Assembly (NCBI RefSeq): GCF_046119375.1
Contig: NW_027362765.1
Coordinates: forward strand, 118,234,001 to 118,298,000
Direction of reading: 5' to 3'
Source of the DNA: Phyllobates terribilis
Lineage: Eukaryota
Length of the DNA: 64,000 nucleotides
Below, piece after piece: positions 998-26,250 of the stretch. Below the pieces are notes generated by a model. That model had not been told where the DNA came from. It worked only from the letters and a program-made list of their open reading frames with translations, and did not search any database. Numbering within the stretch: position 1 is the stretch's first letter; each line of letters starts with the position of its first letter. The position numbers and the translations under genes are program-made.

Positions 998-1026
998 TAT
1001 CATCATCATCATCATCATCATCATCA
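998..1026. repeat. (ATC)n microsatellite
   Basis: Direct reading; gives the poly-M and poly-D stretches in the ORF track. Confidence 0.9.
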
Positions 1027-1259
1027 CAGCAGTTATATCTATATCCTGTGGCACTGTTAGGGGGGTGCAAGGTGGTGCAGATGAAGGGTCCCAACGTGCA
1101 CGGAGCAAGCAATGCTGGAGAAGATGGGGGCTGGTGAATCAAGACCGAAATTTATTGAGAGTCCGCAGGCGTAAAATACACCAAATTCATTACAAGACAC
1201 ACACCTCCTTATGAATTTGCGCATCTTCAGATTTCCAAAGTCACTGTGTAGCCCTAGCC

Positions 1260-2305: not shown

Positions 2306-2753
2306 TAAAGCTATGTTCACATACGTTGAGTTTTTTTCTGCAGCTAAATCTGCTGACAACTTTTCTCTGGCAATAAAACAGCTGCGTCAAAAATGCAGGT
2401 TTTGCTGCGTTTTTTTCCACTGTCCTTCTGTCTCTAGGCATGTACATAAAGTTCTGTGAAAAAAAGAATCCCATTCTATTTTGCCATCAAAAACGCTGCA
2501 AAAACACAGCAAAAAACGCAGGTGCGTTTTTGCAGCGTTTATTTTTTCACCACCCATTACTTCCTAAGGATGAAAAAACGCTGAAAGAAGTGACATGCTG
2601 TATTTTCCAAAATCGCAAGCAAGGCACAAAATACGCAGCAAACAAAAAGCAACATGTGTGAACAGAGAATTCTGGTTTGTCATAGACTTTGCTGGGACTG
2701 CAAAATACAGCTGAAAATCTGCTGCAAAATACAACATGTGTGAACATAACCTA
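2306..2753. mobile_element. MITE (GGCTATGTTCACA family)
   Basis: TAAAGCTATGTTCACAT ... ATGTGTGAACATAACCTAA inverted ends with GCGTTTTT/AAAAACGC internal symmetry. Confidence 0.6.
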
Positions 2754-4149: not shown

Positions 4150-4520
4150 AGATGAGACACCACCACCACCAGGCTGGGTCCTAGGTGTGACACAACCACC
4201 AGGTCTTAGTAATGACATCACCACCAGGCCGGGTCCTAGGTGTGACACCACCACCACCAGGCCAGGTCCTAGGTGTGACACCACCACCACCAGGCCGGGT
4301 CCTAGGTGTGACACCACCACCACCAGACATTAGTATGGCATCACCACCACCAGGCCGGGTCCTAGGTGTGACACCACCACCAGGCCGGGTCCTAGGTGTG
4401 ACATCACCACACCAGACACTAGTATGGCATCACCACCACCAGGCCGGGTCCTAGGTGTGACACCACCACCAGGCCGGGTCCTAGGTGTGACATCACCACA
4501 CCAGACACTAGTATGGCATC
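4150..4520. repeat. 33-bp minisatellite with higher-order spacer
   Basis: Unit CACCACCACCAGGCCGGGTCCTAGGTGTGACAC; spacer AGACACTAGTATGGCATCACCAC recurs three times. Confidence 0.9.
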
Positions 4521-4539
4521 ACCACGCCTGCAGGGCTCC

Positions 4540-5050
4540 GGTTGGCATTTGGAGGGCACACCCCGGGTCGCTCATGTATACTATACGTGTCCAGGAGACT
4601 GTCCTGAACCATCACTCGTTAATCCCTGGTTTCCCCAGCCCTCCCATGCTGCTACCCGCTGGGCCCTGTCCTGTGCCCGGCCGCCTCCTCACCTTGTGCA
4701 GACACACCCACACAGCTGCCCCCGTCATCTCCGGGCTGCCCCTCACCTGCCTTGTCCCAGCCGCCGGTCATTCCGTCCCTCTGTCCAGCCGCCGGATGCC
4801 GACTGACCGCCGGCTCTCACTTCCTTAGCAACAGGCCCGGCGACGACGCGCTCACTTCCTTAGTAACGGTCAACAGGCCGCGGCTTGTACTTCCTTAGCA
4901 ACAGCTGCGCAACCACGCCCACAAGCGACAGCTACAGGGAACTGGGGCTGTTATGGTAGAAGTACTGTTCCCAGCAGCCCCGCTCCAGATCCGTGCGGGC
5001 CCTTAAGTGCCACAGTCCCAGTGGGGCCCCTCGGTGCTTCCGATTTTTGC
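4540..5050 (-). promoter_or_regulatory. CpG island, probable promoter and non-coding first exon of the next minus-strand gene (KIF3B by synteny)
   Basis: CpG-rich segment with three ETS/X-box composites and minus-strand donor-like sites (CAG/GTGAGG, exon end 4747; AAG/GTGAGG, exon end 4693). No KIF3B coding sequence is in the window; identity rests on the vertebrate order KIF3B-POFUT1-PLAGL2-TM9SF4. Confidence 0.6.
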
Positions 5051-5548
5051 TCTTCGCTCAGAGAGCTGTAATATCATTAGGGGGACAGAGTGTTCTGCAG
5101 CTGAACTGGAGCTTACATTGGTACCATTGTTAGAGGAAAAGTTAGCAAGAAAAAAATACAATTTTGCCATTTCGATTTTTTTTTTTTTACACTTTCCGGC
5201 ATTCACGGTACAGGATAAATATTCAGATATTTTGTTACTTTGGACAGCCGCGCTCACGGTGATGGCAGATGTAGGTTTTTTTTTTAAAGCTTTTATTTAC
5301 ATTCTGGGGCAGGAGAGGTCAGCGGAAAATCTATATTTAAAAGAAAAATATATATATATGTGTGTGTGTGTGTGTTTTCGCCATCTTTTTCATAGGTCTC
5401 CTTAAGGAAGCAGAGATCACTAATAGTAATACTAGTACTGTAATATTGCAGTGTATGGTAAATTTCAGTAGTGCAGCCTCAGGCTTCAGCCTGTGATCAG
5501 ATTTCTGTAGGGTGATGACACCTCCTCTCCGTACGTCTGATTAGAGTA

Positions 5549-5727
5549 TAGGCCACGTTCACATATTCAGTATTCAGTCAGTTTTTTACATCAGTATTTA
5601 TAAGCCAAAACCAGGTGAGGAACAATCTGAGAAAAGGTATAATAGAAATGTCACCTATTCTGCATTTATCACCCACTCCTGGTTTTGGCTTACACATACT
5701 GATGTAAAATACTGTAAACATGGCCTA
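5549..5727. mobile_element. Palindromic MITE
   Basis: TAGGCC...GGCCTA ends; arms ACATCAGTAT..AAGCCAAAACCAGG / CCTGGTTTTGGCTT..ATACTGATGT. Confidence 0.6.
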
Positions 5728-6019
5728 GAAGTGTCAGACGGATCAGAAACCTCCACATTACCCCTTTGGCTTAGGTGTCGGCACCGCTACCTGTGTGATA
5801 GATAGCAATGCAGATCTGCCCATGTTCCCTGCTGCCTCTGTTCTTACCTCTTCTCCCCAGTGGAGCCACAAAGCACCTGCCTGCTTCTACAGATGATTGT
5901 GCCAGTGCACAAAATTTAAAGGGGTATTCCAACACCGCTCACTGCCGCACTGGAAGGTGAGAGGAGCCATGACATTGCATAGACGGCCGCTCACTATGAC
6001 TCATGTATGCATCTTATTC

Positions 6020-8032
6020 TATTTAAAGGGACTCTCTTAGCACAAAATGACTGTTCAAACCAAGCACAGGCTCTCGATGCTTTACAGCGTGTCCAATCAT
6101 TTACATGCACCTTCCCACCTGCTTGTTTTTCATCTATCTCCGCCCTTCTCTGGTTCTATGAAGCCAGAGCTGTCAATCAAAGAAGAGGTGAGGATGGAGA
6201 TAGTGGGAAAACAAGTAGGTGGGAAGGTAAATTTAAATGTTTGGCCACACCAAGGGTGCACCAGGCGCCTGTACTTGGTTTGATTAGTCATCCCGTGCTG
6301 ACAGGTTCACAATACCTGCCAATACCTATCAGTCAGCTGTCGACCGATGCAAATCACCTCCCGATGTGGAAGTAAGAGGTGCTGGATAACCTCAGCACCC
6401 CCAAAGAGTCATGCACCTTCTACCATATATTGTATTCTTCAATAACTCAGCATTTGTTTTACTTTAAAAGAGTAACCATTGTTTTAATTTTTCAGAAAAG
6501 AATAGTACACATGAAAATATGTAACTTTATAATATATCTTATCAGATAAATTTGCTTGTCCCTCCTGGACTGATCTTTCCTGCTCAATTCATGGTTAAAA
6601 TCTGTATTCAGTGAAGAAAGATTTTTCCCTTTACTGAGATAGAAGATGGCATTTGGTGCTTTTAAGATTCTATGGAGGAGGAGAAAGGGGCAAAGACATT
6701 TTACTGCAAGTTCTCCTGAAACGAGTTAGTTATCCATAGAACTTTATGAGCACCAACTGTCATCTCTCAGTAATGGTAAAGTCTGTAGTCAACAGAAAAC
6801 AGATTTTACCTGTGAATTAATGATCAGTTCTGGAGGAGAAACCAGATTTCTGTAATTAGATAAAAGATAGTTCAATCCAACGATCTTGGATTTCCAAAGA
6901 TCAATTCTTTCGTTTGGAGGGGAGATAAGGCAGTTCACACAGAGCCTGGCAGAAGCTGTCTCATAGAGGAAACAGGGACACTGAGCCAAGAGTTCCTGTG
7001 TATGGGGGGATTCGGGAAAGATAGCAGTCGGCTGAGCGATTGGACAGCTGTCTAATGTGTATGTGGAAAGATAAAAATGTCCCCCCAATATGGGCTTACA
7101 TGTATCATTATAACATGAGCAGGTTTCCTTTTACTGAGATCAAGCAGAAATCTAGTAGCAGCTTAATACCATCATTTATGCAGGAAGACAACTGGCAAAC
7201 GAATCAGATTTAATGTTTTAATTACAGAAATAAGTATAAAATAATAGGAACACGTTATTTATGTGCCTGTGACTCAGTAAGTGTCTCCTTATGTACGCCG
7301 CTCGCTGATCATTATGACAATGGGTTGTAGCTTCTGTTCACATTGAGTGCACAGTGGTCCCGGATGACGGGGAGAGGTCTTATTTTACAGGGTCCACTGA
7401 CTGCATTTGAAATTTAGTGGAAATAATTCACTGGAAAGTTCAGAAGAGGATACAACTGTCAGATCTTCTCCATGATGGGAACAGACAGGCTGGTGTGTCA
7501 GCACGGACTGTTCAAACCAAGTATAGGCGCTCAGTGCACCCTTGGTGTGACCAAACAGTTTAGTGCATCTTCTCATCTACTTGTTTTATTGACAGCTCTG
7601 GCTTTATAGAGCCAGACAAGGGTGAAAAAGAGATGGTACGGAGATAAAGTTGGGGGGTGGCAGGGGGCAACTAGGTGGGAAGATGCATGTAAATGGACTG
7701 TCAGCACAGAATGACTGTTCTAACCATAGTTTCAGAGGTTGAAGGTAGACTTAAGTCCATCAAAGTTCAACCTATAGCCTAAAATACAAGCCAAGTATAG
7801 GCACTCAGTGCACCATGGTGGGGTCAGTCATTTAACTACACCTTCACACCGGCTTGTTTTCCATCTATCTATGCACTGATCTGGCTCTATCAAGCCAAAG
7901 ATGTGGGTGGGATGGAGAAAAAGGGAGAACAAGTAGGTGGAAAGGAGTAGTTAAATGTTTGTGTTTGGCCCCACCATAGTGCGCCTGCACTTGGTTTGAA
8001 CAGTCATTCTGTGCTGTTAAGACTCCCTTTTA
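6020..8032. mobile_element. Cluster of about three related MITE copies (~6020-6400, ~7385-7690, ~7690-8032) plus another MITE remnant
   Basis: Shared motif GCACAGAATGACTGTTCAAACCAAG and its reverse complement recur at each copy. Boundaries approximate. Confidence 0.5.
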
Positions 8033-8636
8033 AATGCTTATGAGGTACCACATTCTTTAGTATGCCATCAGAAGTGGCAAGGTTGATGGGGTGAAGGCTT
8101 TTTTTGGAAATCGACTTCTAGAAAAGACATTTGTTCCTATTTTATCAGAACATCTTAGGAAATGTCCCTTAAGCAGAATAAAAAATAAAAAAAAAATAAA
8201 GGACTTTATTCACACATATCTGCAGACCCTTGTTTGGGGAACTCTGCTTTCATTTCCAAATCAAGTCTTTATGGTGGAAAGCCCCATGAAGGAGTATACT
8301 CATCTCTCTGGCTATGCCATTACTTTATGATCAGTGAGGATACAAACTCTAGGACCTTCCACACACTTACTGTTAAGGGAAGTCTAGCTGGAGTTATTCA
8401 CTTTAAGGTTGCACCCCCACCGATCGTAAAGTAAGAGCATATCCTACAGATATGCCAACATCCTGCAAAATGGGAATACCCTTTAAAACTAGACATTGGA
8501 CCAAATATCTTGTGGGCGTCACACACTTGGCAGTACAGGGTTTCCCAGGTGAGGACCAGAGCTGGCCTGTTTGCTGGTCGTCTCTTTAACCACAGACTAG
8601 TATTCTCGGGTAGTGTCCTCCCAATGCCAAGCTCCC

Positions 8637-11320
8637 TCATAGCTCATCTGGCTTCCTCACCACTGTATCCATCCCGAAGAAGGAGGAGGGCTTCCCCTGA
8701 AGATCACGCTCCCTCTTCACAAATGCCGTGAATGATGACACACAGTTCCCAATAAAATGGTCCGACTGACCCAGAATATACAGATCTATTTGTGCCACTT
8801 CTGGTTGTAAACTCACAACTTTAACCTACAAGAAAATAAACTGAAAAGATTAATATACAGGAACTTTAGTGACTTCCAGAGCTGCATTCACAATTCTGCT
8901 GCTTTCCTGCTAGCTCTCAGTTTGTGAAACATGCATCTAACTGCTGCCTAACTAAATCACCAACAACAAGTTTTGATAGACAACAGTAATTTGTGAATGC
9001 AGCTTTGGATGTGACTGAAGTATAAGGTATGATGCTATGGAGCTCTGGTGCCTGCTCACCTTCTCCCCCAGAGCCTTCTGTAGTTCGGCAGTGTAAGACG
9101 TGGAGTCAGTAGCTATATATATGGATCTCGCTTTGGTCTTCTTTACCCAGTATGTCAGCGCCCGCTTGATTTCTTTGAGGTCGGGCAGACACATGTTTAT
9201 GGTGAGCGGCTTTGCCTTCTGACGGTCGAACCCAACGCACTGAGGGGAAGCCATGAAATGTGGGCCAGCCGTGCCGTCCTTCAGCATCTTGCAGGCGTTA
9301 ACCTGTAGAGAAGACAAGATATGTATAACAAAGTAAGGCTAATACAACCAGCCGTTAATAAAAAAAGAAATGGTGCCATACTTATAATCATATGGCGCCA
9401 TTCCCCCCCATTAATGCAGTTCTATATGGCAGAAGACTGGGCAACTACAATATTACAGCACAGACAATTTACAAACCAAAGGTTTGCCAATAATCTTTTC
9501 CGCTGCCCAGCATCGCAAACTAACCGTCATCAAGAGTGAACGCTCACCCAGTCAGAGCCGATTCGCAAATGCACCCCCACGTACGGTCGGACAAGCAGGG
9601 CCTCAATTTGCTTCTCTCCCTCTTGAACCATCTTTTCGGACCAGACAATGTACTTCTGTAAACTCCTGTGTTCTTCCAGCACCGGAAACTGGGCTGGTGC
9701 CCCTGGGAGGGCGAGGACAGGGTGCGCTGAAGCGGGGTACCTGGCAAAATCAGAGCAATAAGCATTAGTGTGGCAAGCATTTATAAGCAAGGTCTCAGTT
9801 GCCATGGGCAAAAATGTCTTGTTTTATATGTAAATGTGTCAAAGGATTCCTAAAATGTGTGAGTTTTGAAAGATTTGGGGGTGTCTGCTAACACATTACT
9901 CGTCACTCACCGGCTCTGCCAAACGTCTTTATAATGAGCACTGAAATTGATGCCGTCGAACAGCTCTGAGCGGAAAAAGTCCACATGGAAATGATCCCAG
10001 AAAGGGCCAAATGGATTCCCATCCTGGAAGGAGTATATGATACCAATTAAAAGGGGATGCTAGTGCACACAACGCCGGGTCTACATATTGCAGGTACTCA
10101 ANNNNNNNNNNNNNNNNNNNNNNNNNNNNNNNNNNNNNNNNNNNNNNNNNNNNNNNNNNNNNNNNNNNNNNNNNNNNNNNNNNNNNNNNNNNNNNNNNNN
10201 NNNNNNNNNNNNNNNNNNNNNNNNNNNNNNNNNNNNNNNNNNNNNNNNNNNNNNNNNNNNNNNNNNNNNNNNNNNNNNNNNNNNNNNNNNNNNNNNNNNN
10301 NNGACACACCTTCCCATTTAAAGATTTTTCTGTATTTTCTTGACTATGAAAATTGTACATTCACATTGAAGGCATCAAAACTATGAATTAACACATGTGG
10401 AATTATATACTTAACAAAAAAGTGTGAAACAACTGAAAATATGTCTTATATTCTAGGTTCTTCAAAGTAGCCACCTTTTGCTTTGATGACTGCTTTGCAC
10501 ACTCTTGGCATTCTCTTGATGAGCTTCAAGAGGTAGTCACCGGAAATGGTTTTCACTTCACAGGTGTGCCCTGTCAGGTTTAATAAGTGGGATTTCTTGC
10601 CTTATAAATGGGGTTGGGACCATCAGTTGTGTTGTGCAGAAGTCTGGTGGATACACAGCTGATAGTCCTACTGAATAGACTGTTAGAATTTGTATTATGG
10701 CAAGAAAAAAGCAGCTAAGTAAAGAAAAAAGGAGTGGCCATCAATACTTTAAGAAATGAAGGTCAGTCAGTGTGAAAAATTGGGAAAACTTTGAAAGTGT
10801 CCCCAAGTGCAGTTGCAAAAACCATCAAGCGCTACAAAGAAATTGGCTCACATGAGGACCGCCCCAGGAAAGGAAGACCAAGAGTCACCTCTGCTTCTGA
10901 GGATAAGTTTATCCGAGTCACCAGCCTCAGTTTGCGTTTAGTTGGACCATCATTTATTTTTCAACAGGACAATGACCCCAAACACACCTCCAGGCTGTGT
11001 AAGGGCTATTTGACCATGAAGGAGAGTGATGTAGTGCTACGCCAGATGACATGGCCTCCACAGTCACGAGACCTGAACCCAATCGAGATGGTTTGGGGTG
11101 AGCTGGATCGCAGAGTGAAGGCAAAAGGGCCAACAAGTGCTAAGCATCTCTGGGAACTCCTTCAAGATTGTTGGAAGACCATTTCCGGTGACTACCTCTT
11201 GAAGCTCCACATGTGTTAATTCATAGTTTTGATGCCTTCAGTGTGAATGTACAATTTTCAAAGTCATGAAAATACAGAAAAAAATCTTTAAATGAGAAGG
11301 TGTGTCCAAACTTTTGGTCT

Positions 11321-11399
<79 letters not shown>

Positions 11400-14300
11400 G
11401 CAGGGGGCACCATTAACAAGTAGGTTACTGCAACATCTAGTCCTTGACTGCTGCCTGTGACAGCACAATGATTAGGCGGTCCGTTCTTGGGTGAGAAGCT
11501 TTACTGCAAGGTTATCACTATAGCATTATATCTTTGGCATTGAAAAAGATAAAGCAACTTGATGATAGCCAAAACCACCACTGATCCCAAAAATTGGGCT
11601 CTGTGGTACTGTGTTAAATTGGAGCGATGGTGGAGGATTTGATTGTCTACGAGACCGCCAGAGATAGCCAAGTACGGTGCTCGGCTACTTCCGGCAGTCC
11701 CATACAGAACAAATGGAGCAGAGGTGTGCATGTGTGTCCGTCGCTCTATTCATATGGAGCCCTTGTGAGCCCGATTCTTGGAACCACTGGGGGCTCCAGC
11801 TGTAAAGGTCCCCATACACATTAGACTTAAGTCGGCTGAACTCACCGATATCAATGGGTTTGGCAGATGGGCTAATGTGTGTGGAGGCACCAGCCGAATG
11901 ATTGTCAGGAGATGTTGGTCGTACATGTCCGATTTCAGACTTTCAATCACATTGTTCTCACTGAGAACCTGCCAGCCGAAATGTGGTTTTCATATAGAGA
12001 GCTTAAGGGTATGTTCACACGTTCAGTATTTGGTTGCAGAAATTTCTGCATCTCTTGGCAGGAAAAACACATTGGCAAAAACGCACGTTTGACGCGTTTT
12101 TGCTTGCATTTTTTTTACCTGCGATTTTCTAGCATTTTGGGATGAGAAAACGTTGCAAAAAACGCTGGAAGAATTGACATGCTGCAGATTTTTTTCTGCA
12201 AGTCAGAAACGTGTGCGTGACACTTCGGATTCTCATTGACTTTGCCGGCATCAGAATTTCCGACAAATCTACAATCAAAAACGTGACGTGTGCACATAGC
12301 CTTAAAGTGCTTGGCTGAGCGAGCATTCCTGTATATGGGTGTGAAAGCTGAGATGGCTGCTGGCTGAACAATCAGCCAAAGCATTGCTCGGCTGACAGTC
12401 ATCTAAGGTGTATGGTTGGCCTAAGACCCCTAGCAATTTATCACCCATCTTGTGAATAAGTGATAACCCTTTAAATGGGCTTTTCATAGGATAGGGGATA
12501 GTTTGCTGAAAGCGAAGGGGTTAGACTGCTGGGTCCTCCACCGTTCCCAAAAACAGGGCTCTGCAGGGAGCAGTCTTGAAAGAATGGAGCGGAGGTGCAT
12601 ATGCTCAGCCTCCACTCAATGCATTATCAATGGGACTGCCAGAAATACTCAGCTTCCTCCGCTAGTCCCATAGACAACAAAAGGAGTGGAGGTTGAACAT
12701 GCGTACATCTGCTCCATTTTATAGACTGCCCCTGCACAAGGACTTCTCAGCGAACAGCATATTATACATTGGGAAAACCCCTTTAAAGATGACCAGAATG
12801 GTTGGTATCAGATCACAAAAATAGAATGTATTCATGGGTATGTAAACACGTCTCACATTGAAAAACCCATCTAAAAGATAACTTTTAATAGATTATTTTA
12901 ATGCAATGTCTTACAACTCACAAAAGACACCAAGTACCATAGAAACAGACACAAGTAAAAATGTGATCCATCCACTGGCAATCGACAGATAAATCACTTA
13001 TTATAAAGCAGTTTGTGGCACACGTGCAGATGACACCGAGAACCACTAACAAAATATCTCTCAATCATGATCCGTCCGCCTCTACCAGTGATAGATCACA
13101 GACATAAAATGCCACCAGGAATACCGTCAGTAGATAATGCTGGTATGTTGTGGCTCCAAANNNNNNNNNNNNNNNNNNNNNNNNNNNNNNNNNNNNNNNN
13201 NNNNNNNNNNNNNNNNNNNNNNNNNNNNNNNNNNNNNNNNNNNNNNNNNNNNNNNNNNNNNNNNNNNNNNNNNNNNNNNNNNNNNNNNNNNNNNNNNNNN
13301 NNNNNNNNNNNNNNNNNNNNNNNNNNNNNNNNNNNNNNNNNNNNNNNNNNNNNNNNTAAAAATCTCATTCCACTCCAAATTAGGAGTATAGATAAATACT
13401 TCCCCGACTGAGACACGGTGGCAGATAATTTCCCACATATATTACGATAAGAGATTACATACGGACACAGTAAAGATTACTCAGCTACTATCATCAATCA
13501 TTAGAATACGTAGCCAGAAGCTGATAAAGGTTGCACATGGATCCCTTCCACCATTCACATTAAACAGTACTAGATTTGCCCAAGCAGTTTGCCATAAAGT
13601 TAAGCCCCCGTCTCACATAGCGAGATCGCTAGTGAGATCGCTGCTGTGTCACGGTTTTGGTGACGCAACAGCGACCTCACCAGCGATGTCGCTATGTGTG
13701 ACACTTTGCAGCGATCAGGCCCCTGCTGTGAGGTCGCTGATCGCTGCAAAGTGTCCTGGACCATTTTTTGGTTGTTGCTCTCCCGCTGGTCAGCACACAT
13801 CGCTGTGTGTGACCAGCGGGAGCAGCGATCAGGCTGGTAACTATGGTAAACACCGGGTTACTAGGGGCACACGCGCACCTAGTAACCCGTTATTTATCAT
13901 GGTTACGAGCCTGCTAAAGTGAGCGTTAACCTCCCGCTCACCGTAGCAGAGTGGTAACCATGATAAACAACGGGTTACTAGGAGCACGTGTGCCCCTAGT
14001 AACCCGCTGTTTATCATGGTTACCAGCCTGCTCCTGCTTCAGCAGGCTTGTAACCAGGAGCAGGACATCGTGGAAAGATTCTTTCCACGATGTCGCTGCT
14101 CCCCTGATCGTTGGTGAGCCTGCCTGTTTGACAGCTCTCCAGCGACCACATAGCGACGCAGCAACGATCCCTGACAGGTCGTATCGTTGTCGGGATTGTT
14201 GCAGCGTCGCTAAGTGTGACCGGGCCTTTAGAGTGCAAGATTTTCAACTTATCTCAGTATGTGGGAATCCTGCCTCCCCTGTCAGTCGTGGGGTTCCACA

Positions 14301-17300
14301 ATCCTCAACGCGTTTCCCCATATCGTTTTAGGTTCATCAGGAGGAAAAATTAGAACAAGTGTGATTAGGTGTCCTGCCGATAACCTGCAGTCCATTTAAT
14401 GCTATCCCTCTCCCTCTTAATATATCCACCTCTACAGATGTATTTAATTAGAGTCCACTCCCCCAAACACAGAGGTAAGTATCCCCCATTGATATCAATC
14501 GCGTGCTTGTCCTTCCCTCCTCTAGTGCGTATGTCTGTAAACCCGACATCCACTAGAGGTACTTCGGGTGTACTGCGCACGTGCGAGTGCAGTGTCTGAC
14601 GTCAGGCATTCAGACACGCCTCCACTCTAGAGGAATTCACGGGATCGCCGCACACAGTGAAGTCCGCGCATGCGCACCCGTCCACACAGATAAAGCGGAC
14701 GGAGAACACTGCGCAGGTACCCCAATGTGGTGCAGCCAAACATACTGGATCAAAGCACCCCACAGACATTGGATTCAGGGGAACAGTTGATTACCGCCCC
14801 AGCATTATATCACAAAGGTCTATGGTGTGTGTGTATACCAACCGATATTCAATTCTAAAAGGCAGGCAGAAAAAAAGGGGGATACATTCCAGCAGTTCCA
14901 AAAGCCGCATAACAGGAAAGGGGGAAAAATCATGCATTCCACTAATTTATATAAAGGGGAATATATGTGGGAACAGGAGGGTTAAAGAGGGCATGTACTG
15001 GGTGTCTGAGTTATAATAGAACCTCTGATATAGACAATGATAAACAATAAACTTATCCACGATAGTCAAAATAGAATTAGACATTTAACCATGCTGGCTG
15101 GTGATTGTAGTCCCTATCAATCAGATAAAGCAGCAATAATTCTGTTGTTCATTGAGACCATTCGGAGTCAAAGCGCCGAATCTAAAAATCCATTGCCATT
15201 CTTTTTGGAGTAACAACCTGTTCCAATCACCCCCCCCCTCTCATTTTTTCGGATAACCTCTATAACACAGAAGGAGACCGCATTTATGTTATTAGAATGC
15301 AGTTCCCTAATGTGCCGAGCCATGGGTGTGTCTCTCCTGTGCCGTATGTCCCCAAGATGTTCACCAATCCGTCTCCGTAGTTCCCTTTTGGTTTTACCAA
15401 TGTAAATCTTGGGGCAGGGGCACATAGCCATGTAAATTACCCCTTCTGTTTTACAATTGGCAAAATCCCTCATGAAAAAAAACTTTTCCCACCTTACTGC
15501 CAGTGAAATTCTTAGATGGTCTCAGCCACAGACAGAATTTACAATTTCCGCATCTAAAAGTACCACAGGTCCTACGTTCAAGCCAGGATCCCTGTCTGGC
15601 CGGCCGCTTATATAAACTGTGGACCAAACAGTCCTGTAGTGACCGTCCCTTCCTATAGGTAACACTTGAATGCTCAGCAATGAATCCTTTGAGGTCAGGG
15701 TCCATCCCAAGAACCCCCCAGTGCGTACGTACAATGTTCATCACCTCACTCGCCCTGTTATCAAAAGTGCCAATAATTCTGGGCGGACCACTGGTTTCCT
15801 CTCTCCTATCTGCTGGGTATAATAATCTTTGTCTATCCTGGCCATTGGCATGGAGAAAGGCCGTTTCAATAACCTTTTCGGGATACCCCGTTCCTGAAAC
15901 GATCCCTTAATTCACGGGATTGAGACAAACACTCCTTGACTGGAACAGTTCCTCCTTATACGTAGGAACTATCCCTTGGGTATACCTCTCTTCAAGGGAC
16001 CCGGATGATGGCTTTCCCACCTGAGAAAACTGTTTGCTGCGGTCGGTTTTCGGAAGGTTCGGGTTGTGATGAAACCATCCTGGTCTCTCCCAATTGTTAA
16101 ATCAAGAAAAGTCAACTCGTCCCCCGTGATTTCAGATGTAAACCTCATATTAATTTCATTAGTATTGAGGCACTGTATGAATTTTTGGAAATCATCTAGT
16201 GATCCCAACCAGAGGAGAAAGACGTCGTCGATAAATCTAGACCATAGCAAAATAAATGGGAACCACCAAGCTTCCTCCCGCAACACCACAGTCTCCTCCC
16301 ACCAGCCCAGGAAGAGATTAGCATACGATGGGGCTGAGGGGCTCGCCATCGCAGTCCCCCTGAGCTGGTGGTAGTTTTGCCATTGAAGGAGAAATGATTG
16401 TGGGCGAGTATGAATGACATCAGATTACACACAAATCGATTATGTGTGGCAAACGGTGTTGCCCTTGTCCCGAAAAAATGTTGTAACCCTCTAAGGCCCG
16501 CCCCATGTGGTATGTTGCTGTAAAGGGCTTCCACATCAATGGATGCAAAGAATATCCCATTATTCACACCAATCCCCTCAAGTTTGACCAATAGATCGGA
16601 CGTGTCCCTCAGATATGACGGTAACGAGGACACGAACGGTCGGAGTACTTTATCAACATATACTCCCAGGTTCTGGCATAAGGAGCCCACCCCTGACACA
16701 ATAGGACGACCCTTAAGGGGGTTTGTACCCTTATGTAACTTAGGGAGGGCATAAAACGTAGGGGTGACAGGATGGACCGGTAGAAGGAACTCATTCATTT
16801 TTAGATATCACCCTAGCTTCAAGATTTTCAATCAATATTGAGGTTAGTGTCTCAAGATATTGAGGAGTAGGGTCAATTTTTAGGATCTCATAAGTATCCT
16901 TATCTCCCAATATTACTTGACACATGGAGAGGTAGAGAGGGTGGTTAAGGATCACCAGGTTACCCCCTTTATCTGAGGGTTTAATAATCAGTTCCTGGTT
17001 TTCTTCCAGTTTCCTCATTGCTTCAGATTGAGTAGCAGATAAATTGGATCTGAACGCCGTCACTTTGGGGGTACTCATCTTAGAGAGATCATTCTCCACT
17101 AGTTTCAGAAAAATATCGATGCTGTCCACATCACCAGAGGGAGGGGGGGGGGGGTAGTTTTGTGCTTTTCCTCTTTAGTTCAGTGAAGGGTCCTAAGCCA
17201 CTAGGTTCCTCATTCTCATTTAGAAGATCAGTCAAGGTTTCCAAAGCTGTGAGTTCATCCTCACTTATCCCCAATTTTTGGCTTTTCTCCTTATTTTGTT

Positions 17301-20300
17301 GTTTGTAAAACTTGTGCCATTTTAGCTTCCGCCCAAATAGATTGATGTCTTTTACCCACGTAAAGGAGTTATAGGGAGTAGTCGGGACAAATGATAACCC
17401 CTTGTAAAGTACTTTCATTTCTTCCTGTGTCAGCCTATATTGGGTCAGATTGACAATTTGACTAGTTGGCCCCTCTATTGGTTTCTGTTTCTCAGCTGAT
17501 AACCAACCGGGGCCCTCTGCTTCAAAAAAGAAGCAGATGAGGACGAGGCTGGTGATCCTGATTCCCGTGCTCCTCCCGTTCCCATTGTTTTCAAAAGTCC
17601 TGGGGATTCGGGTGTCATGTTCTGAAAGGGGTTCCCCACATCCCTCTGAGCTCCATGGTCCAACCACCTTCCTCCTCGCCCTCTCCATCTATTTTTCTGA
17701 ATCCTCTCCCTCTCTGTCTCCACCTACCCCTTGAGTTGGATCTTTCTCTGTCTCAGCTTTCGGCTTCAGAGGATGATATACAAGTACTCACACCTATTGT
17801 TGAAGCCGTGTAATTATAAGCGCCATTATCTTTGAAGTCATTAAAGTCTCTCACAAACTGATTGTGTTTTCTATCCTTGATGATGGCCTGAAAAAAGAAT
17901 GGTTGGTACTCAACACTAAGGAAAATCGATGGAATCAGTACAGAAACGCTGATCACCAGGCCCACAGCCACTGTTCACCTTCATGGGGCAGCTCTTCTTA
18001 TCAGGGCTCCTCTGAGCAGCCGCAGTAAAGCAGTAAGCCACACGCTTCTCCGCCGGCCAGTACTTGGCAGCAAACTTCTCCATGAAGTCCTCCATACTCA
18101 TCACTCTGTGGTACTGGCTGAGGGGGGCCAGCTGGAAATATTCTGCAAAAGACACATGCACCTGCAGAAAAGCCCAAGGACACCAATTAGTGTGAAGGGA
18201 TCCTCTACAACCCCCCGATCATTACAGCAACACCCACAACATAAACAGCTAAATAGATGCCAGAGAGGCTGAAAAGATCATCGATTCCTGCTCACTCACA
18301 TTGGTGTATGGAGGACGATGGTGGTTGTAAACAATCCACGGAGGGACGACCAGCGTCCGATTCACCATCTTGGCAAAGGCTAAAGAGCCGAGGAAGTGAT
18401 CCGCCTGATTGCCAAACCGCCCTGCACAAAGAAACGCAACCACTAATAAATTAAATCATGATATCATGGCTTCTACACGCCGCCGCACCCAAAAACTCCC
18501 CCTAATGCTTATATGTCAATGCTGAAACACTCAGTGCTGCTGTGGTATGCACTGCTCACATCTACTGCCTCTGTACAATGTACACACCACAGACTCCATA
18601 ACATGGAGAATATCTAGCAGCTATGAAATCTGTGTTTTTGGAGCAGGCAGAGAATTGGCAGCTGAGCACTGCAGGACTGGGTGGAGATGCCCCTGGGGTA
18701 AGAAGAGATCAGGGAGGAGGAGGACTAAACATCATCACTGCTGAGTAAAAGAGAATATGAGACTTTGGAGAAGCTGTCCCTACCCAAGAAAGAAGTGTAG
18801 AGAGTGCCCCCTACTGCTCTTTGTAATTGCTCTGTGCACAGGATGCCCCCCCCCCCCCCCCCCGTATACAGGGCTCGGCGCACAGGGTCTCCCCCCCCGT
18901 ATACAGGGCTCGGCGCACAGGGTCTCCCCTCTCGTATACAGGGCTCGGCGCACAGGGTCTCCCCTCTCGCATACAGGGCTCGGCGCACAGGGTCTCCCCT
19001 CTCGCATACAGGGCTCGGCGCACAGGGTCTCCCCTCTCGCATACAGGGCTCGGCGCACAGGGTCTCCCCTCTCCTCCCGTAAACAGGGCTCGGCACACAG
19101 GGTCTCCCCTCTCCTCCCGTATACAGGGCTCGGCGCACAGGGTCTCCCCTCTCCTCCCGTATACAGGGCTCGGCGCACAGGGTCTCCCCTCTAGTATACA
19201 GGGCTCGGCGCACAGGGTCTCCCCTCTAGTATACAGGGCTCGGCGCACAGGGTCTCCCCTCTCGCATACAGGGCTCGGCGCACAGGGTCTCCCCTCTCCT
19301 CCCGTATCCAGGGTTCGGCGCACAGGGTCTCCCCTCTCGCATACAGGGCTCGGCGCACAGGGTCTCCCCTCCCGCATACAGGGCCTCCCCTCCCGTATAC
19401 AGGGCTCGGCGCACAGGGTCTTCCCTCTCCTCCCGTATACAGGGCTCGGCGCACAGGGTCTCCCCTCTCCTCCCGTATACAGGGCTCGGCGCACAGGGTC
19501 TCCCCTCTCCTCCCGTATACAGGGCTCGGCGCACAGGGTCTCCCCTCTCCTCCCGTATACAGGGCTCGGCGCACAGGGTCTCCCCTCTCGTATACAGGGC
19601 TCGGCGCACAGGGTCTCCCCTCTCGCATACAGGGCTCGGCGCACAGGGTCTCCCCTCTCGCATACAGGGCTCGGCGCACAGGGTCTCCCCTCTCCTCCCG
19701 TAAACAGGGCTCGGCACACAGGGTCTCCCCTCTCCTCCCGTATACAGGGCTCGGCGCACAGGGTCTCCCCTCTCCTCCCGTATACAGGGCTCGGCGCACA
19801 GGGTCTCCGTTCTCGTATACAGGGTTCAGCGCACAGGGTCTCCGTTCTCGTATACAGGGCTCGGCGCACAGGGTCTCCCCTCTCGTATACAGGATTCGGC
19901 GCACAGGGTCTCCCCTCTCCTCCCGTATACAGGGCTCGGCGCACAGGGTCTCCCCTCTCCTCCCGTATACAGGGCTCGGCGCACAGGGTCTCCCCTCTCC
20001 TCCCGTATACAGGGCTCGGCGCACAGGGTCTCCCCTCTCCTCCCGTATACAGGGCTCGGCGCACAGGGTCTCCCCCCCCGTATACAGGGCTCGGCGCACA
20101 GGGTCTCCCCCCCCGTATACAGGGCTCGGCGCACAGGGTCTCCCCTCTCGCATACAGGGCTCGGCGCACAGGGTCTCCCCTCTCGCATACAGGGCTCGGC
20201 GCACAGGGTCTCCCCTCTCGCATACAGGGCTCGGCGCACAGGGTCTCCCCTCTCCTCCCGTAAACAGGGCTCGGCACACAGGGTCTCCCCTCTCCTCCCG

Positions 20301-23117
20301 TATACAGGGCTCGGCGCACAGGGTCTCCCCTCTCCTCCCGTATACAGGGCTCGGCGCACAGGGTCTCCCCTCTAGTATACAGGGCTCGGCGCACAGGGTC
20401 TCCCCTCTAGTATACAGGGCTCGGCGCACAGGGTCTCCCCTCTCGCATACAGGGCTCGGCGCACAGGGTCTCCCCTCTCCTCCCGTATCCAGGGTTCGGC
20501 GCACAGGGTCTCCCCTCTCGCATACAGGGCTCGGCGCACAGGGTCTCCCCTCCCGCATACAGGGCCTCCCCTCCCGTATACAGGGCTCGGCGCACAGGGT
20601 CTTCCCTCTCCTCCCGTATACAGGGCTCGGCGCACAGGGTCTCCCCTCTCCTCCCGTATACAGGGCTCGGCGCACAGGGTCTCCCCTCTCCTCCCGTATA
20701 CAGGGCTCGGCGCACAGGGTCTCCCCTCTCCTCCCGTATACAGGGCTCGGCGCACAGGGTCTCCCCTCTAGTATCCAGGGCTCGGCGCACAGGGTCTCCC
20801 CTCTCCTCCCGTATCCAGGGCTCGGCGCACAGGGTCTCCCCTCTCCTCCCGTATCCAGGGCTCGGCGCACAGGGTCTCCCCTCTCCTCCCGTATCCAGGG
20901 CTCGGCGCACAGGGTCTCCCCTCTCCTCCCGTATCCAGGGCTCGGCGCACAGGGTCTCCCCTCTCCTCCCGTATCCAGGGCTCGGCGCACAGGGTCTCCC
21001 CTCTCCTCCCGTATCCAGGGCTCGGCGCACAGGGTCTCCCCTCTCCTCCCGTATCCAGGGCTCGGCGCACAGGGTCTCCCCTCTCCTCCCGTATACAGGG
21101 CTCGGCGCACAGGGTCTCCCCTCTCGTATACAGGGCTCGGCGCACAGGGTCTCCCCTCTCCTCCCGTATACAGGGCTCGGCGCACAGGGTCTCCCCTCTC
21201 CTCCCGTATACAGGGCTCGGCGCACAGGGTCTCCCCTCTCGTATACAGGGCTCGGCGCACAGGGTCTCCCCTCTCCTCCCGTATACAGGGCTCGGCGCAC
21301 AGGGTCTCCCCTCTCCTCCCGTATACAGGGCTCGGCGCACAGGGTCTCCCCTCTCCTCCCGTATACAGGGCTCGGCGCACAGGGTCTCCGTTCTCGTATA
21401 CAGGGTTCGGCGCACAGGGTCTCCGTTCTCGTATACAGGGCTCGGCGCACAGGGTCTCCGTTCTCGTATACAGGGCTCGGCGCACAGGGTCTCCGTTCTC
21501 GTATACAGGGCTCGGCGCACAGGGTCTCCGTTCTCGTATACAGGGCTCGGCGCACAGGGTCTCCGTTCTCGTATACAGGGCTCGGCGCACAGGGTCTCCG
21601 TTCTCGTATACAGGGCTCGGCGCACAGGGTCTCCGTTCTCGTATACAGGGCTCGGCGCACAGGGTCTCCGTTCTCGTATACAGGGCTCGGCGCACAGGGT
21701 CTCCGTTCTCGTATACAGGGTTCGGCGCACAGGGTCTCCGTTCTCGTATACAGGGCTCGGCGCACAGGGTCTCCCCTCTCGTATACAGGGCTCGGCGCAC
21801 AGGGTCTCCCCTCTCGTATACAGGGCTCGGCGCACAGGGTCTCCCCTCTCCTCCCGTATACAGGGCTCGGCGCACAGGGTCTCCCCTCTCCTCCCGTATA
21901 CAGGGCTCGGCGCACAGGGTCTCCCCTCTCGTATACAGGGCTCGGCGCACAGGGTCTCCCCTCTCCTCCCGTATACAGGGCTCGGCGCACAGGGTCTCCC
22001 CTCTCCTCCCGTATACAGGGCTCGGCGCACAGGGTCTCCCCTCTCGTATACAGGGTTCGGCGCACAGGGTCTCCCCTCTCGTATACAGGGCTCGGCGCAC
22101 AGGGTCTCCGTTCTCGTATACAGGGTTCGGCGCACAGGGTCTCCGTTCTCGTATACAGGGCTCGGCGCACAGGGTCTCCCCTCTCGTATACAGGATTCGG
22201 CGCACAGGGTCTCCCCTCTCCTCCCGTATACAGGGCTCGGCGCACAGGGTCTCCCCTCTCCTCCCGTATACAGGGCTCGGCGCACAGGGTCTCCCCTCTC
22301 CTCCCGTATACAGGGCTCGGCGCACAGGGTCTCCCCTCTCCTCCCGTATACAGGGCTCGGCGCACAGGGTCTCCGTTCTCGTATACAGGGTTCGGCGCAC
22401 AGGGTCTCCGTTCTCGTATACAGGGTTCGGCGCACAGGGTCTCCGTTCTCGTATACAGGGCTCGGCGCACAGGGTCTCCGTTCTCGTATACAGGGCTCGG
22501 CGCACAGGGTCTCCGTTCTCGTATACAGGGCTCGGCGCACAGGGTCTCCGTTCTCGTATACAGGGCTCGGCGCACAGGGTCTCCGTTCTCGTATACAGGG
22601 CTCGGCGCACAGGGTCTCCGTTCTCGTATACAGGGCTCGGCGCACAGGGTCTCCGTTCTCGTATACAGGGCTCGGCGCACAGGGTCTCCGTTCCTCGTAT
22701 ACAGGGCTCGGCGCACAGGGTCTCCGTTCTCGTATACAGGGCTCGGCGCACAGGGTCTCCGTTCTCGTATACAGGGTTCGGCGCACAGGGTCTCCGTTCT
22801 CGTATACAGGGTTCGGCGCACAGGGTCTCCGTTCTCGTATACAGGGCTCGGCGCACAGGGTCTCCGTTCTCGTATACAGGGCTCGGCGCACAGGGTCTCC
22901 CCTCCCGTATACAGGGCTCGGTGCACAGGGTCTCCCCTCCCGTATACAGGGCTCGGTGCACAGGGTCTCCCCCGGACTCACCCATGCAGGGACAGTACAG
23001 CAGATACCCGGCCGGGTCCCATTCCCTCTCTGCCAGGTGCAGTTCTGGGAGTATAAGGAGCAGGAGGAAACTCAGCGGCTTCATGACGGCCGGAAGCAAT
23101 CCCCCGTGCGCCGCCAT
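8637..23117 (-). CDS. POFUT1: GDP-fucose protein O-fucosyltransferase 1, 7 coding exons, 392 aa
   Basis: Exons on minus strand: 23117-22982, 18421-18300, 18161-17979, 10023-9911, 9740-9548, 9302-9060, 8825-8637 (1179 nt). All introns GT-AG with consistent phases. Recognisable peptides: [97 protein letters not shown]-terminal signal peptide; C-terminus PDEL. Confidence 0.98.
10102..10302. other. Assembly gap (~200 N)
   Basis: Run of N. Confidence 1.
10303..11325 (+). mobile_element. Internally deleted Tc1-like transposon
   Basis: Long inverted ends (10303-10550 vs 11180-11325; the right copy has an internal deletion). ORF 10791-11219 joins HTH/GRPR motifs directly to FQQDNDPKH and [12 protein letters not shown]. 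Left tip is in an assembly gap; right end runs into (TA)n. Confidence 0.9.
11325..11394. repeat. (TA)n microsatellite at the Tc1 target site
   Basis: About 35 TA units directly after the Tc1 right end. Confidence 0.95.
12007..12301. mobile_element. TTAA-flanked MITE nested in an older MITE (~11800-12425)
   Basis: TTAA on both sides; TIR GGGTATGTTCACACG / CGTGTGCACATAGCC. Confidence 0.75.
13161..13356. other. Assembly gap (~196 N)
   Basis: Run of N. Confidence 1.
13604..14226. mobile_element. Palindromic TTAA-type (T2/Kolobok-like) MITE
   Basis: TTAA at the left, TTTA at the right. Imperfect TIR GCCCCCGTCTCACATAGCGA / TCGCTAAGTGTGACCGGGCC; mirrored internal hairpins. Confidence 0.75.
14250..17890 (-). 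mobile_element. Penelope-like retroelement (RT + GIY-YIG endonuclease), 5'-truncated and frameshifted, in POFUT1 intron 3
   Basis: Consecutive minus-strand ORF pieces. N-terminal [13 protein letters not shown]; RT motifs [67 protein letters not shown]; linker CGNCKFC; endonuclease [34 protein letters not shown]; terminal [15 protein letters not shown] with stop at 15121. 3' UTR carries a hammerhead. The Cys linker suggests the Neptune clade (tentative). Confidence 0.93.
14302..14345 (-). ncRNA. Minimal type I hammerhead ribozyme motif
   Basis: Minus strand reads TCCTC CTGATGA A CCTA AAACGATA TGGG GAAA CGCG TT GAGGA: 5-bp stem I, intact core, 4-bp stem II, palindromic CGCG stem III. Located in the 3' part of a Penelope element. 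Confidence 0.8.
18860..22972. repeat. GC-rich 35/40-bp minisatellite, ~4.1 kb, filling POFUT1 intron 1
   Basis: Core CGTATACAGGGCTCGGCGCACAGGGTCTCC with CCTCT, CCTCTCCTCC or GTTCT linkers; roughly 110 copies. Confidence 0.97.
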
Positions 23118-25839: not shown

Positions 25840-26250
25840 AATATATGGGAATACAAACTCATGGTGACCTTTGACACCTTCAGAGTAGGAATGAATGTGT
25901 CACATGGATTTATGTCATTCTACATCAGCTAAGGAATGTGCTCCTCAGAACTGTGGGGTCATCACACCCTGGACCAGACTGCATTCACAGGACAATAAAA
26001 CTTTCACACTCCTTATCTATGAACTGTTCCAATATTTACAGCCAGAACTGTTTATCTCTCTCCCATAGTAATAGTTCTGCTTTACTTTCATTATTTCTGT
26101 GTCTTATTATGTATAAACATGTGACTCTTCAGATTTTGTGTTATTCTATGCCTGATGAAGAGACCTGAGTAGTCTCGAAAGCTTGTAACTTATTACCATC
26201 TTTTCTGTTAGCCATTAAAAGGTATCAACCACTGAGGACTCTCAAATCTA
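25840..26250 (+). mobile_element. 3' terminal fragment of a second Penelope-like family in PLAGL2 intron 1
   Basis: Encodes a C-terminal peptide WEYKLMVTFDTFRVGMNVSHGFMSFYIS* resembling PLE ORF ends, then an AT-rich UTR, a hammerhead core and ATTAAA. Confidence 0.7.
26148..26188 (+). ncRNA. Minimal type I hammerhead ribozyme motif with weakened stem I
   Basis: TGC CTGATGA A GAGAC CTGAGTA GTCTC GAAA GC TT GTA: intact core, perfect 5-bp stem II, palindromic AAGCTT at stem III, only 3 bp (one GU) in stem I. Confidence 0.72.

What the first reader, a model, noticed from the sequence alone, without database searches (positions are those of the whole stretch)
14302..14345. Intact minimal hammerhead ribozyme in a Penelope 3' end, sense to the POFUT1 pre-mRNA
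Seen: all core nucleotides (CUGAUGA, GAAA, UH), a perfect 5-bp stem I (UCCUC/GAGGA), a 4-bp stem II after an extra A, and a palindromic CGCG stem III, ~800 nt downstream of the PLE stop codon. Known: Penelope elements carry minimal type I hammerheads that cleave mainly as dimers. Inference: element and POFUT1 are both on the minus strand, so every POFUT1 pre-mRNA carries this ribozyme in intron 3. Cleavage (predicted after GUU, between 14307 and 14306) could affect splicing or create intronic RNA ends.
Basis: partly seen in the sequence, partly recalled or inferred. Interest (0 to 1): 0.7.

Follow-up and report, generated by a model that had tools for sequence, protein, structure and literature searches.

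The report
Solitary Penelope hammerhead motif in POFUT1 intron
A complete but solitary mini hammerhead-ribozyme motif sits at the tail of a broken Penelope-like jumping gene inside intron 3 of a frog's POFUT1 gene; frog genomes hold thousands of such relics, and nothing here suggests that this one cuts the host RNA.

Summary
At 14345-14302 (-) the sequence reads UCCUC / CUGAUGA / A / CCUA-loop-UGGG / GAAA / CGCG / U U / GAGGA. That gives every hammerhead core base, a 5-bp helix I, a 4-bp helix II and a palindromic helix III. A strict descriptor found it in 0 of 1000 shuffled windows.

It lies 823 nt after the stop of a GIY-YIG endonuclease ORF of a frame-broken Penelope-like element (PLE). Three other anuran PLE lineages carry the same architecture in the same 3' region (two at 852-943 nt, one about 1.5 kb), with fully covarying stems.

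It is sense-oriented in POFUT1 intron 3. Exons 1-3 lie upstream and exons 4-7 downstream, all on the minus strand.

The functional inference is not supported:
- The motif is solitary, with no upstream repeat and no compatible partner in 64 kb, and helix III can form only in a dimer.
- The predicted monomer fold sequesters the core.
- Rfam scores it 14.1 bits against a threshold of 34.
- Published work finds monomers inactive and dimers weak, and no RNA-seq ends at a PLE hammerhead site.
- Only assembled contigs were available, so RNA ends could not be tested. One contig from a possibly-RNA run spans the site uncut.

Verdict: an ordinary new member of a known kind. The scan has 48 similar notes, those shown being from this frog genome.

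The parts
14302..14345 (-). Minimal type I hammerhead motif. Helix I UCCUC/GAGGA, core CUGAUGA, unpaired A, helix II CCUA/UGGG with an 8-nt loop, GAAA, palindromic CGCG, U16.1, U17. Predicted cut between 14307 and 14306.
14228..15167 (-). 3' non-coding region of the PLE (pseudo-LTR equivalent), carrying the hammerhead near its 3' end. It is cut off at 14227/14228 by a later repeat insertion.
   Evidence: The positional equivalents in L001 and L008 lie 852-943 nt after the endonuclease domain; L007's is about 1.5 kb after it.
15168..15473 (-). GIY-YIG endonuclease ORF piece of the PLE. The stop codon is at 15168-15170.
   Evidence: Pfam PF01541 E 1.6e-6. 57-62% identity to endonuclease pieces on other Logan assembly contigs.
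15451..17688 (-). N-terminal, reverse-transcriptase and linker pieces of the PLE ORF. They are split into five further pieces in different frames: 17131-17688, 16791-17129, 16196-16798, 15969-16349 and 15451-15744.
   Evidence: best named hit: Ranitomeya imitator 'reverse transcriptase domain-containing', 57% identity; collinear tblastn matches to PLE copies in L007 and L008. Pfam itself gives no RT hit.
13600..14227 (.). A 628-nt hairpin-rich, extremely abundant repeat (MITE-like, with inverted termini) inserted 75 nt 3' of the hammerhead. It is not part of the ribozyme.
   Evidence: summed contig depth about 5e5 against about 10-70 for the flanks; repeat boundaries at 13599/13600 and 14228; one DNA contig joins 13599 to 14228.
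10023..17980 (-). POFUT1 intron 3, which contains all of the above. It includes two N runs, 10102-10302 and 13161-13356, which were left untouched.

Best explanation
This is the 3'-terminal minimal hammerhead (min-HHR) of a 5'-repeat-less, frame-broken Penelope-like retrotransposon that landed in sense orientation in POFUT1 intron 3 of a frog. The motif keeps every catalytic-core base and both short helices. Like all metazoan PLE min-HHRs it has no helix III of its own. Its ACGCGU palindrome can build helix III only by pairing with a second copy, in a domain-swapped dimer that also needs matching helix I strands. In a living PLE the second copy comes from the tandem or flanking repeat. Here there is none, so in POFUT1 pre-mRNA the motif is expected to be inert or nearly so: a neutral relic carried through and removed with the intron. 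Shown here: the motif, its non-random nature, its PLE context, its positional and structural homology to other anuran PLE hammerheads, its sense intronic location, and the absence of a partner in cis. Inferred: the lack of meaningful cleavage.
For: Motif and statistics.

PLE context: GIY-YIG Pfam hit; RT and endonuclease pieces with homologues on anuran contigs; collinear N-RT-EN tblastn matches.

Homologous hammerheads in the 3' region after the endonuclease in other PLE lineages: L001 1678-1718, L008 3073-3115 and 7905-7947 (852-943 nt after it), and L007 4212-4253 (about 1.5 kb after it). They share the GAAA + palindrome + U + H layout, and all but L001 the unpaired base. All helix I and helix II pairs change while staying paired. 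The 10.1-11.1 pair is C-G, U-A, G-C and A-U in the four lineages, so the C-G here is within natural variation.

Solitary copy: no direct repeat of the 3' region upstream of the ORF, and no second compatible motif in 64 kb.

Dimer dependence: the monomer minimum-energy fold is -8.8 kcal/mol for the 44-nt core (-9.6 with flanks, where it is no better than shuffles, z -0.09) and pairs core bases. The dimer is -24.9, with an intermolecular AACGCGUU duplex and swapped helix I.

Dead element: five frame changes among six ORF pieces. At least three of them are spanned by independent read contigs without gaps.

Literature: single motifs are inactive, and dimers are weak mostly at non-physiological Mg2+ (PMC4209133). 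The Poseidon hammerhead cuts only when PLE protein is added, and no RNA-seq reads end at its site (PMC11167929). X. tropicalis has about 9000 min-HHRs (PMC4209133). About 44% of Xenopus retrozyme hammerhead copies lie in introns (bioRxiv 10.64898/2026.07.22.740005).

Reads: a 151-nt contig from run X10 (guessed to be RNA) spans 14222-14372 uncut with no differences.
Against: No activity test was possible and no raw RNA reads were served, so absence of cleavage is inferred, not shown. The core is fully intact in an element that has accumulated frameshifts. That could mean youth, chance or constraint, and I could not date the copy or see orthologous introns. Trans dimers between two pre-mRNAs, or with transcripts of same-subfamily PLE copies elsewhere in the genome, cannot be excluded, nor can chaperoning by PLE protein from live copies. 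The RNA nature of runs X8, X10 and X11 is only a guess by the tool.
Confidence: 0.8

Rival explanations
1. The motif is a working ribozyme on the host transcript. Two POFUT1 pre-mRNAs, or a pre-mRNA plus a same-subfamily PLE transcript, possibly helped by PLE protein from live copies, form the dimer and cut intron 3. This creates intronic RNA ends and lowers or modulates POFUT1 mRNA output.
For: The catalytic core is complete and the palindromic helix III favours dimerisation (predicted gain -7.3 kcal/mol). The motif is sense-oriented in the intron. PLE hammerheads can cleave as dimers or with PLE protein in vitro (PMC4209133, PMC11167929). The preprint 10.64898/2026.07.22.740005 reports depletion of retrozyme hammerhead copies from introns, which its authors read as selection against genic insertion.
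Against: There is no cis partner. Trans pairing of nascent nuclear pre-mRNAs through a 6-8-bp palindrome plus 5-bp swapped stems is limited by concentration. Helix I is open, so there is no loop-loop tertiary contact of the kind canonical hammerheads need at physiological Mg2+ (background given in PMC4209133). The monomer fold competes. No RNA-seq ends were found at the site in the one PLE examined (PMC11167929). One contig of a possibly-RNA run crosses the site uncut.
Confidence: 0.06
2. The motif is a hammerhead in form only, already catalytically dead. The cause would be its non-canonical C10.1-G11.1 pair, its weak 4-bp helix II with a G-U, its slow GUU cleavage triplet, or unseen context effects. 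On this reading it could not cut even as a perfect tandem dimer.
For: C10.1-G11.1 replaces the G10.1-C11.1 that PMC4209133 lists as highly conserved in min-HHRs. Rfam gives only 14.1 bits. The fold energy is no better than shuffles (z -0.09). The host PLE copy is decayed. From my own recollection of the classical mutagenesis literature (not checked here), swapping the 10.1-11.1 pair and using GUU instead of GUC both lower rates in minimal hammerheads.
Against: Four related anuran PLE lineages show four different 10.1-11.1 pairs, so this position is not fixed in this group. No core base is changed, unlike L007, which has A at position 8. Rfam also fails to report the hammerheads of L001 and of 26149-26187, so its low score is uninformative for min-HHRs.
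Confidence: 0.12
3. It is a chance match to a short degenerate pattern, unrelated to ribozymes.
For: The bare core pattern CTGATGA...GAAA...TH is expected 1.6 times in the window by chance. Rfam is below threshold.
Against: With helices required, there were 0 hits in 1000 shuffles. The motif lies in the sense strand of a PLE 3' region, as hammerheads do in three other PLE lineages (two at about the same distance from the endonuclease ORF), with the same helix III palindrome in two of them and covarying stems.
Confidence: 0.02

Closest known systems
Minimal hammerheads (min-HHRs) of metazoan Penelope-like elements (Cervera & De la Pena 2014, PMC4209133; Lunse, Weinberg & Breaker 2017, cited in PMC6765202 but not readable here)
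   Same: Type I topology, complete core and a short open helix I (5 bp). There is one unpaired base between A9 and 10.1, and no real helix III but a palindromic 15.2-16.2 stretch (CGCG). It lies in the terminal repeat region of a PLE, in the sense strand, and is dimer-dependent by design.
   Different: The 10.1-11.1 pair is C-G instead of the reported G-C. Helix II has only 4 bp, against 6-8 bp in the Schistosoma and Drosophila examples. Only one copy is present instead of one in each flanking repeat.
Poseidon PLE of Anolis carolinensis (PAc) and its hammerhead (Frangieh et al. 2024, PMC11167929)
   Same: A vertebrate PLE with a hammerhead in the pseudo-LTR. That ribozyme's activity was marginal: it needed PLE protein, was not needed for insertion in vitro, and left no RNA-seq ends at the cut site.
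   Different: In PAc the ORF start overlaps the hammerhead. Here the AUG inside CUGAUGA opens only a 10-codon frame, and the element's own ORF has no hammerhead in front of it.
Non-LTR retrozymes / amphibian satellite hammerheads (Cervera & De la Pena 2020, PMC7229834; Li, Clavereau & Pollet 2026 preprint, 10.64898/2026.07.22.740005)
   Same: Type I hammerheads derived from PLE terminal repeats. They are abundant in amphibians, many occur as dispersed monomers, and about 44% of Xenopus copies lie in introns.
   Different: Retrozymes are tandem, non-coding units that give circular RNAs. This is a single motif still attached to its PLE ORF.
Conserved intronic hammerheads of amniotes (Rfam HH9/HH10 class; De la Pena & Garcia-Robles 2010, as cited in PMC4209133)
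   Same: A sense-oriented hammerhead inside an intron of a protein-coding gene.
   Different: Those have closed helices with loop-loop tertiary contacts, are conserved across species and cleave efficiently as monomers. None of that is shown here, and the structural features are absent.

Membership tests
Hammerhead ribozyme, type I (Rfam RF00163) | Conserved core: C3 U4 G5 A6 N7 G8 A9, G12 A13 A14, A15.1-U16.1, H17 (not G) | tested here: met
   All are present at 14340-14334, 14316-14313 and 14308-14307.
Hammerhead ribozyme, type I (Rfam RF00163) | Three helices around the core, with 5' and 3' ends in helix I | tested here: inconclusive
   Helix I has 5 bp and helix II has 4 bp. Helix III in the monomer is a single A-U pair closing a 4-nt loop, and forms properly only in a dimer.
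Hammerhead ribozyme, type I (Rfam RF00163) | Score at or above Rfam's gathering threshold | tested here: not met
   14.1 bits against 34, and no hit at gathering threshold. The model also misses two other PLE-type motifs.
Hammerhead ribozyme, type I (Rfam RF00163) | Site-specific self-cleavage 3' of H17 | not testable with these tools
   Only contigs were available from read laying, and there is no biochemical assay.
PLE minimal hammerhead (min-HHR) | Located in the terminal repeat / 3' non-coding region of a Penelope-like element, same strand as the ORF | tested here: met
   823 nt after the GIY-YIG ORF stop, on the minus strand like the ORF. Related PLEs also carry theirs in the 3' region after the endonuclease: 852-943 nt in L001 and L008, about 1.5 kb in L007.
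PLE minimal hammerhead (min-HHR) | Unpaired nucleotide between A9 and 10.1 | tested here: met
   A at 14333.
PLE minimal hammerhead (min-HHR) | Palindromic 15.2-16.2 / loop 3 that allows a dimeric helix III | tested here: met
   A-CGCG-U. Cofold gives an intermolecular AACGCGUU duplex at -24.9 kcal/mol against 2 x -8.8.
PLE minimal hammerhead (min-HHR) | Highly conserved G10.1-C11.1 pair (PMC4209133) | tested here: not met
   The pair is C-G here. It is also U-A, G-C and A-U in three related anuran PLE hammerheads, so the feature is not fixed in this group.
PLE minimal hammerhead (min-HHR) | A second copy in the other flanking repeat or in a tandem neighbour | tested here: not met
   There is no upstream repeat and no second compatible motif in the window. 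By contrast, L008 shows the tandem layout with hammerheads 4832 nt apart.
Penelope-like element | Single ORF with reverse transcriptase followed by a GIY-YIG endonuclease | tested here: met
   GIY-YIG PF01541 at E 1.6e-6. The RT piece matches a protein that UniRef names 'reverse transcriptase domain-containing' (Ranitomeya imitator, E 1.8e-44). Order is collinear with the PLE copies in L007 and L008. Pfam's own RT models do not hit the pieces. The ORF is split over six frame pieces.
Penelope-like element | Flanking direct pseudo-LTRs | tested here: not met
   No direct repeat between the 5' and 3' sides. The copy appears to lack the 5' repeat.
Host-conserved intronic hammerhead (HH9/HH10 kind) | Conservation at the orthologous intron position across species, and closed helices with tertiary loop contacts | not tested
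   No tool reaches orthologous frog introns. Structurally, helix I is open and helix III is absent.

The most novel reading that the evidence does not exclude
The solitary min-HHR is cut in vivo through trans-dimers, either between two POFUT1 pre-mRNAs at the transcription site or with RNAs of same-subfamily PLE copies, assisted by PLE protein. A dead retrotransposon tail would then act as a co-transcriptional brake on a Notch-pathway glycosyltransferase gene.
Probability: 0.04. Interest if true: 0.6.

Novelty: new member of a known kind. Interest (0 to 1): 0.15.

Why it matters
It matters little as it stands. It is one more of the thousands of Penelope-derived minimal hammerheads that amphibian genomes carry, many of them in introns. 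Two small points have value. First, four anuran PLE lineages keep the same hammerhead layout, two at about the same distance behind the endonuclease, while changing every helix pair, including 10.1-11.1. This is clean covariation support for the fold, and it cautions against treating G10.1-C11.1 as a rule for min-HHRs. Second, Rfam's type I model does not detect these motifs in ordinary scans. If in vivo cutting of host pre-mRNAs by such solitary motifs were ever shown, it would bear on why hammerhead-carrying repeats are depleted from introns.

Tried and rejected
- Rfam found nothing at gathering threshold on the whole window or at E<=10 on 1 kb (only miRNA-like hits on the neighbouring hairpin repeat). 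The hammerhead model surfaced only on a 91-nt piece.
- The bare core pattern search is not significant on its own.
- The repeat finder found no 5' copy of the 3' region.
- Pfam gave no RT hit on any RT piece even at E<=10. PDB sequence search of the RT piece gave only noise.
- Several related loci were too short or had no DNA. L002, L003, L005 and L006 end before the expected hammerhead. P0009 and P0012 (the Ranitomeya contig) returned no DNA. L004 has 1.1 kb of 3' flank but no motif by my descriptors.
- The 3' non-coding regions of related PLEs do not align at the DNA level.
- The MAFFT alignment of the motifs (A1) misplaces the core by one column. I therefore compared helices segment by segment in a script and built no covariance model.
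- The look-up of sequencing runs listed no run on record as RNA and no raw reads, so read laying could not show ends, strand or level.
- I left the conserved POFUT1 exons out of the laid stretch on purpose. That meant I could not use splice joints to decide whether X8, X10 and X11 are RNA.
- I did not use the large representative protein search, because the protein's identity was not in doubt.
- POFUT1 exons were searched one by one by reference. The joined spliced protein was not built.
- N runs were left as they are.
Full report
**1. What is in the sequence**

On the minus strand, 14345-14302 reads UCCUC CUGAUGA A CCUA AAACGAUA UGGG GAAA CGCG U U GAGGA. In hammerhead numbering:
- C3-A9 is CUGAUGA (14340-14334).
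- One unpaired A follows (14333).
- Helix II is C-G, C-G, U-G, A-U, closed by an 8-nt loop.
- G12-A14 plus A15.1 is GAAA (14316-14313).
- CGCG fills positions 15.2-16.2.
- U16.1 is at 14308 and U17 at 14307.
- GAGGA pairs perfectly with the 5' UCCUC as helix I.

The next outward pair would be U-U, so helix I is exactly 5 bp.

**2. Is it more than chance?**

The bare pattern CTGATGA..GAAA..TH is not significant: 2 hits against 1.6 expected. Once the helices are required, a descriptor scan finds only this site and a weaker one at 26149-26187 (+) in the whole window. In 1000 dinucleotide-preserving shuffles, the strict version (helix I >=5 bp, helix II >=4 bp, palindromic helix III) never hit. 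The relaxed version averaged 0.024 hits.

Rfam's type I model aligns over its full length but scores 14.1 bits against a threshold of 34, and is seen only in a 91-nt search. The same model reports nothing for two other Penelope-type motifs that I examined. Its silence therefore says little about minimal hammerheads.

**3. Context: a Penelope-like element**

Upstream on the same strand lie six ORF pieces, running from 17688 down to 15168.
- The last piece (15168-15473) hits Pfam GIY-YIG at E 1.6e-6.
- The piece 16352-16798 finds anuran proteins at up to 60% identity. One of them, from Ranitomeya imitator (57% identity), is named 'reverse transcriptase domain-containing' by UniRef.
- All pieces match PLE copies in fetched loci L007 and L008 (Pelobates cultripes) in collinear order.
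- Pfam's own RT models do not recognise the pieces.

The six pieces sit in five successive different frames. Read contigs from other individuals differ from the window by small indels at 15926 (+AT in all three runs that cover it), 16026, 16792 and 15230. These lie at or near two of the five frame changes. The number of real breaks is therefore uncertain, and some may be assembly error. The changes near 17130, 16200-16350 and 15460 are spanned by contigs without gaps, so the copy is broken in any case. I only observed these differences and built no repaired frame.

The 940 nt between the stop (15168-15170) and 14228 are non-coding, and carry the hammerhead 823 nt after the stop. No direct repeat of this region exists upstream of the ORF, so the copy lacks the 5' pseudo-LTR and its hammerhead.

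At 14227/14228 the element is interrupted by a 628-nt hairpin-rich repeat (13600-14227). That repeat is enormously abundant in the DNA run. One DNA contig joins 13599 directly to 14228.

**4. Related hammerheads elsewhere**

The endonuclease and RT pieces led to contigs of other anuran PLE lineages (37-62% protein identity).
- L001 has a motif at 1678-1718, 943 nt after its endonuclease ORF stop.
- L008 has motifs at 3073-3115 and 7905-7947, each 852 nt after an endonuclease match and 4832 nt apart. This is the classical tandem PLE layout. It also has an inverted copy at 737-779.
- L007 has one at 4212-4253, with A instead of G at core position 8.

All share the layout core / helix II / GAAA / 4-nt palindrome (CGCG or CAUG) / U / H / helix I, with an unpaired base after the core in all but L001. 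The 3' regions themselves do not align. Every pair of helices I and II differs between lineages while staying paired. The 10.1-11.1 pair is C-G here, U-A in L001, G-C in L008 and A-U in L007. The departure from the 'highly conserved G10.1-C11.1' of PMC4209133 is therefore natural variation in this group and not evidence of decay. The sample is four lineages, so this is suggestive rather than a census.

**5. Host gene**

POFUT1 runs on the minus strand.
- Exon 1 ends in ...YCPCMG, at about 22975-23100.
- Intron 1 holds a 4.1-kb minisatellite.
- Exon 2 (about 18301-18421) and exon 3 (about 17981-18160) have clear acceptor and donor sites, and hit Pfam O-FucT profile positions 6-47 and 50-108.
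- Exon 4 (about 9911-10022) follows.
- Exons 5-7 hit profile positions 151-192, 191-282 and 290-325.

The hammerhead therefore lies in intron 3 (17980 to 10023), in sense. Exons were searched one at a time, and I did not build the joined protein.

**6. How it would work, and why it probably does not here**

With a single A-U pair closing a CGCG loop, the monomer has no helix III. Its minimum-energy fold instead pairs core bases GAUG with CGUU, and is no more stable than shuffled sequence (z -0.09).

Two copies are predicted to pair through AACGCGUU, with helix I formed between molecules. The dimer scores -24.9 kcal/mol against 2 x -8.8. In such a domain-swapped dimer, each active site takes its enzyme half from one copy and its cleavage site from the other. 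A partner must therefore share both the palindrome and the helix I strands.

No such partner exists in the intron or the window. The motif at 26149-26187 is on the other strand and has an AGCU palindrome. A remnant at 3604-3640 (-) shares only GAAACGCGTTGA and has lost the core and helix II.

The published data fit this reading:
- Single motifs show no cleavage, and dimers or trimers show low cleavage, mostly at non-physiological Mg2+ (PMC4209133).
- The Anolis Poseidon hammerhead cut only when PLE protein was added. It was dispensable for insertion in vitro, and left no RNA-seq read ends at its site (PMC11167929).
- About 44% of Xenopus retrozyme hammerhead copies lie in introns (10.64898/2026.07.22.740005).

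**7. RNA evidence**

No listed run is on record as RNA, and all were served as assembled contigs, which cannot show ends or strand. Runs X10, X11 and X8 are small (110-180 million letters) yet cover patches of the intron at depth 2-10. That fits RNA or enriched DNA, and I could not tell which. One X10 contig (14222-14372, no differences) crosses the predicted cut site with 85 and 66 nt on either side. This shows at most that uncut molecules exist.

**8. Verdict**

The structural and positional parts of the interpretation are supported. The suggested effect on POFUT1 RNA is not supported, although it is not formally excluded.

This is a new member of a known kind and of low interest. The scan's index holds 48 notes on hammerhead/Penelope motifs; those shown were all from this genome.

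Noticed in passing
window 18863-22971: A 4.1-kb minisatellite (35-36-nt unit, about 112 copies, 92% matches, 60-67% GC) fills POFUT1 intron 1, directly after exon 1 (...YCPCMG). It is open in several frames on both strands and produces a spurious 1335-aa ORF that starts with the real POFUT1 signal peptide.
   Followed up: partly
window 13600-14227: A 628-nt hairpin-rich repeat with inverted termini (MITE-like) is inserted 75 nt 3' of the hammerhead. Its summed contig depth is about 5e5 in a DNA run, against about 10-70 for the flanks. It gives sub-threshold miRNA-family hits in Rfam (mir-606 42 bits, mir-249 33 bits). One DNA contig joins 13599 to 14228, suggesting an empty site or a paralogue, but its shorter side is only 27 nt.
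   Followed up: partly
window 26149-26187 (+): A second minimal hammerhead-like motif: CUGAUGA, unpaired A, 5-bp helix II GAGAC/GUCUC with G10.1-C11.1, GAAA, and AGCU palindrome. Helix I has only 3 bp. No PLE ORF was evident upstream in the ORF list, and Rfam is silent. The scan already notes it as s1-201043.
   Followed up: partly
window 3604-3640 (-): A gutted remnant that shares the 12-mer GAAACGCGTTGA and a UGAAAACCU stretch with the hammerhead at 14302-14345. It lacks the core and the 3' strand of helix II. It is probably a dead copy of the same subfamily, about 5 kb beyond the last POFUT1 coding exon.
   Followed up: partly
window 15926, 16026, 16792, 15230: Read contigs differ from the window by small indels. 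There is +AT after 15926 in all three runs that cover it, and +AT after 16792 in about half the depth of X1. There are 1-nt losses at 16026 in X1 and at 15230 in X1 and X8 (minor in X1). Two of these places coincide with frame changes of the PLE ORF. This is either assembly error or allelic variation.
   Followed up: no
window 14323-14471: The only DNA contig of run X1 over this stretch differs from the window at 6 of 149 positions (4%), all outside the hammerhead part. Contigs of X10 match the window. This is either a divergent haplotype or a paralogue.
   Followed up: no
L008 (Pelobates cultripes OW240915.1) 700-16000: This locus holds a textbook PLE cluster. Two tandem copies have hammerheads at 3073 and 7905. 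An inverted hammerhead lies at 737-779. A head-to-head pair of PLE ORFs (11946-13769 minus, 13789-15954 plus) has expected hammerheads that my descriptors did not find.
   Followed up: partly
window 10102-10302 and 13161-13356: Two N runs lie inside POFUT1 intron 3.
   Followed up: no
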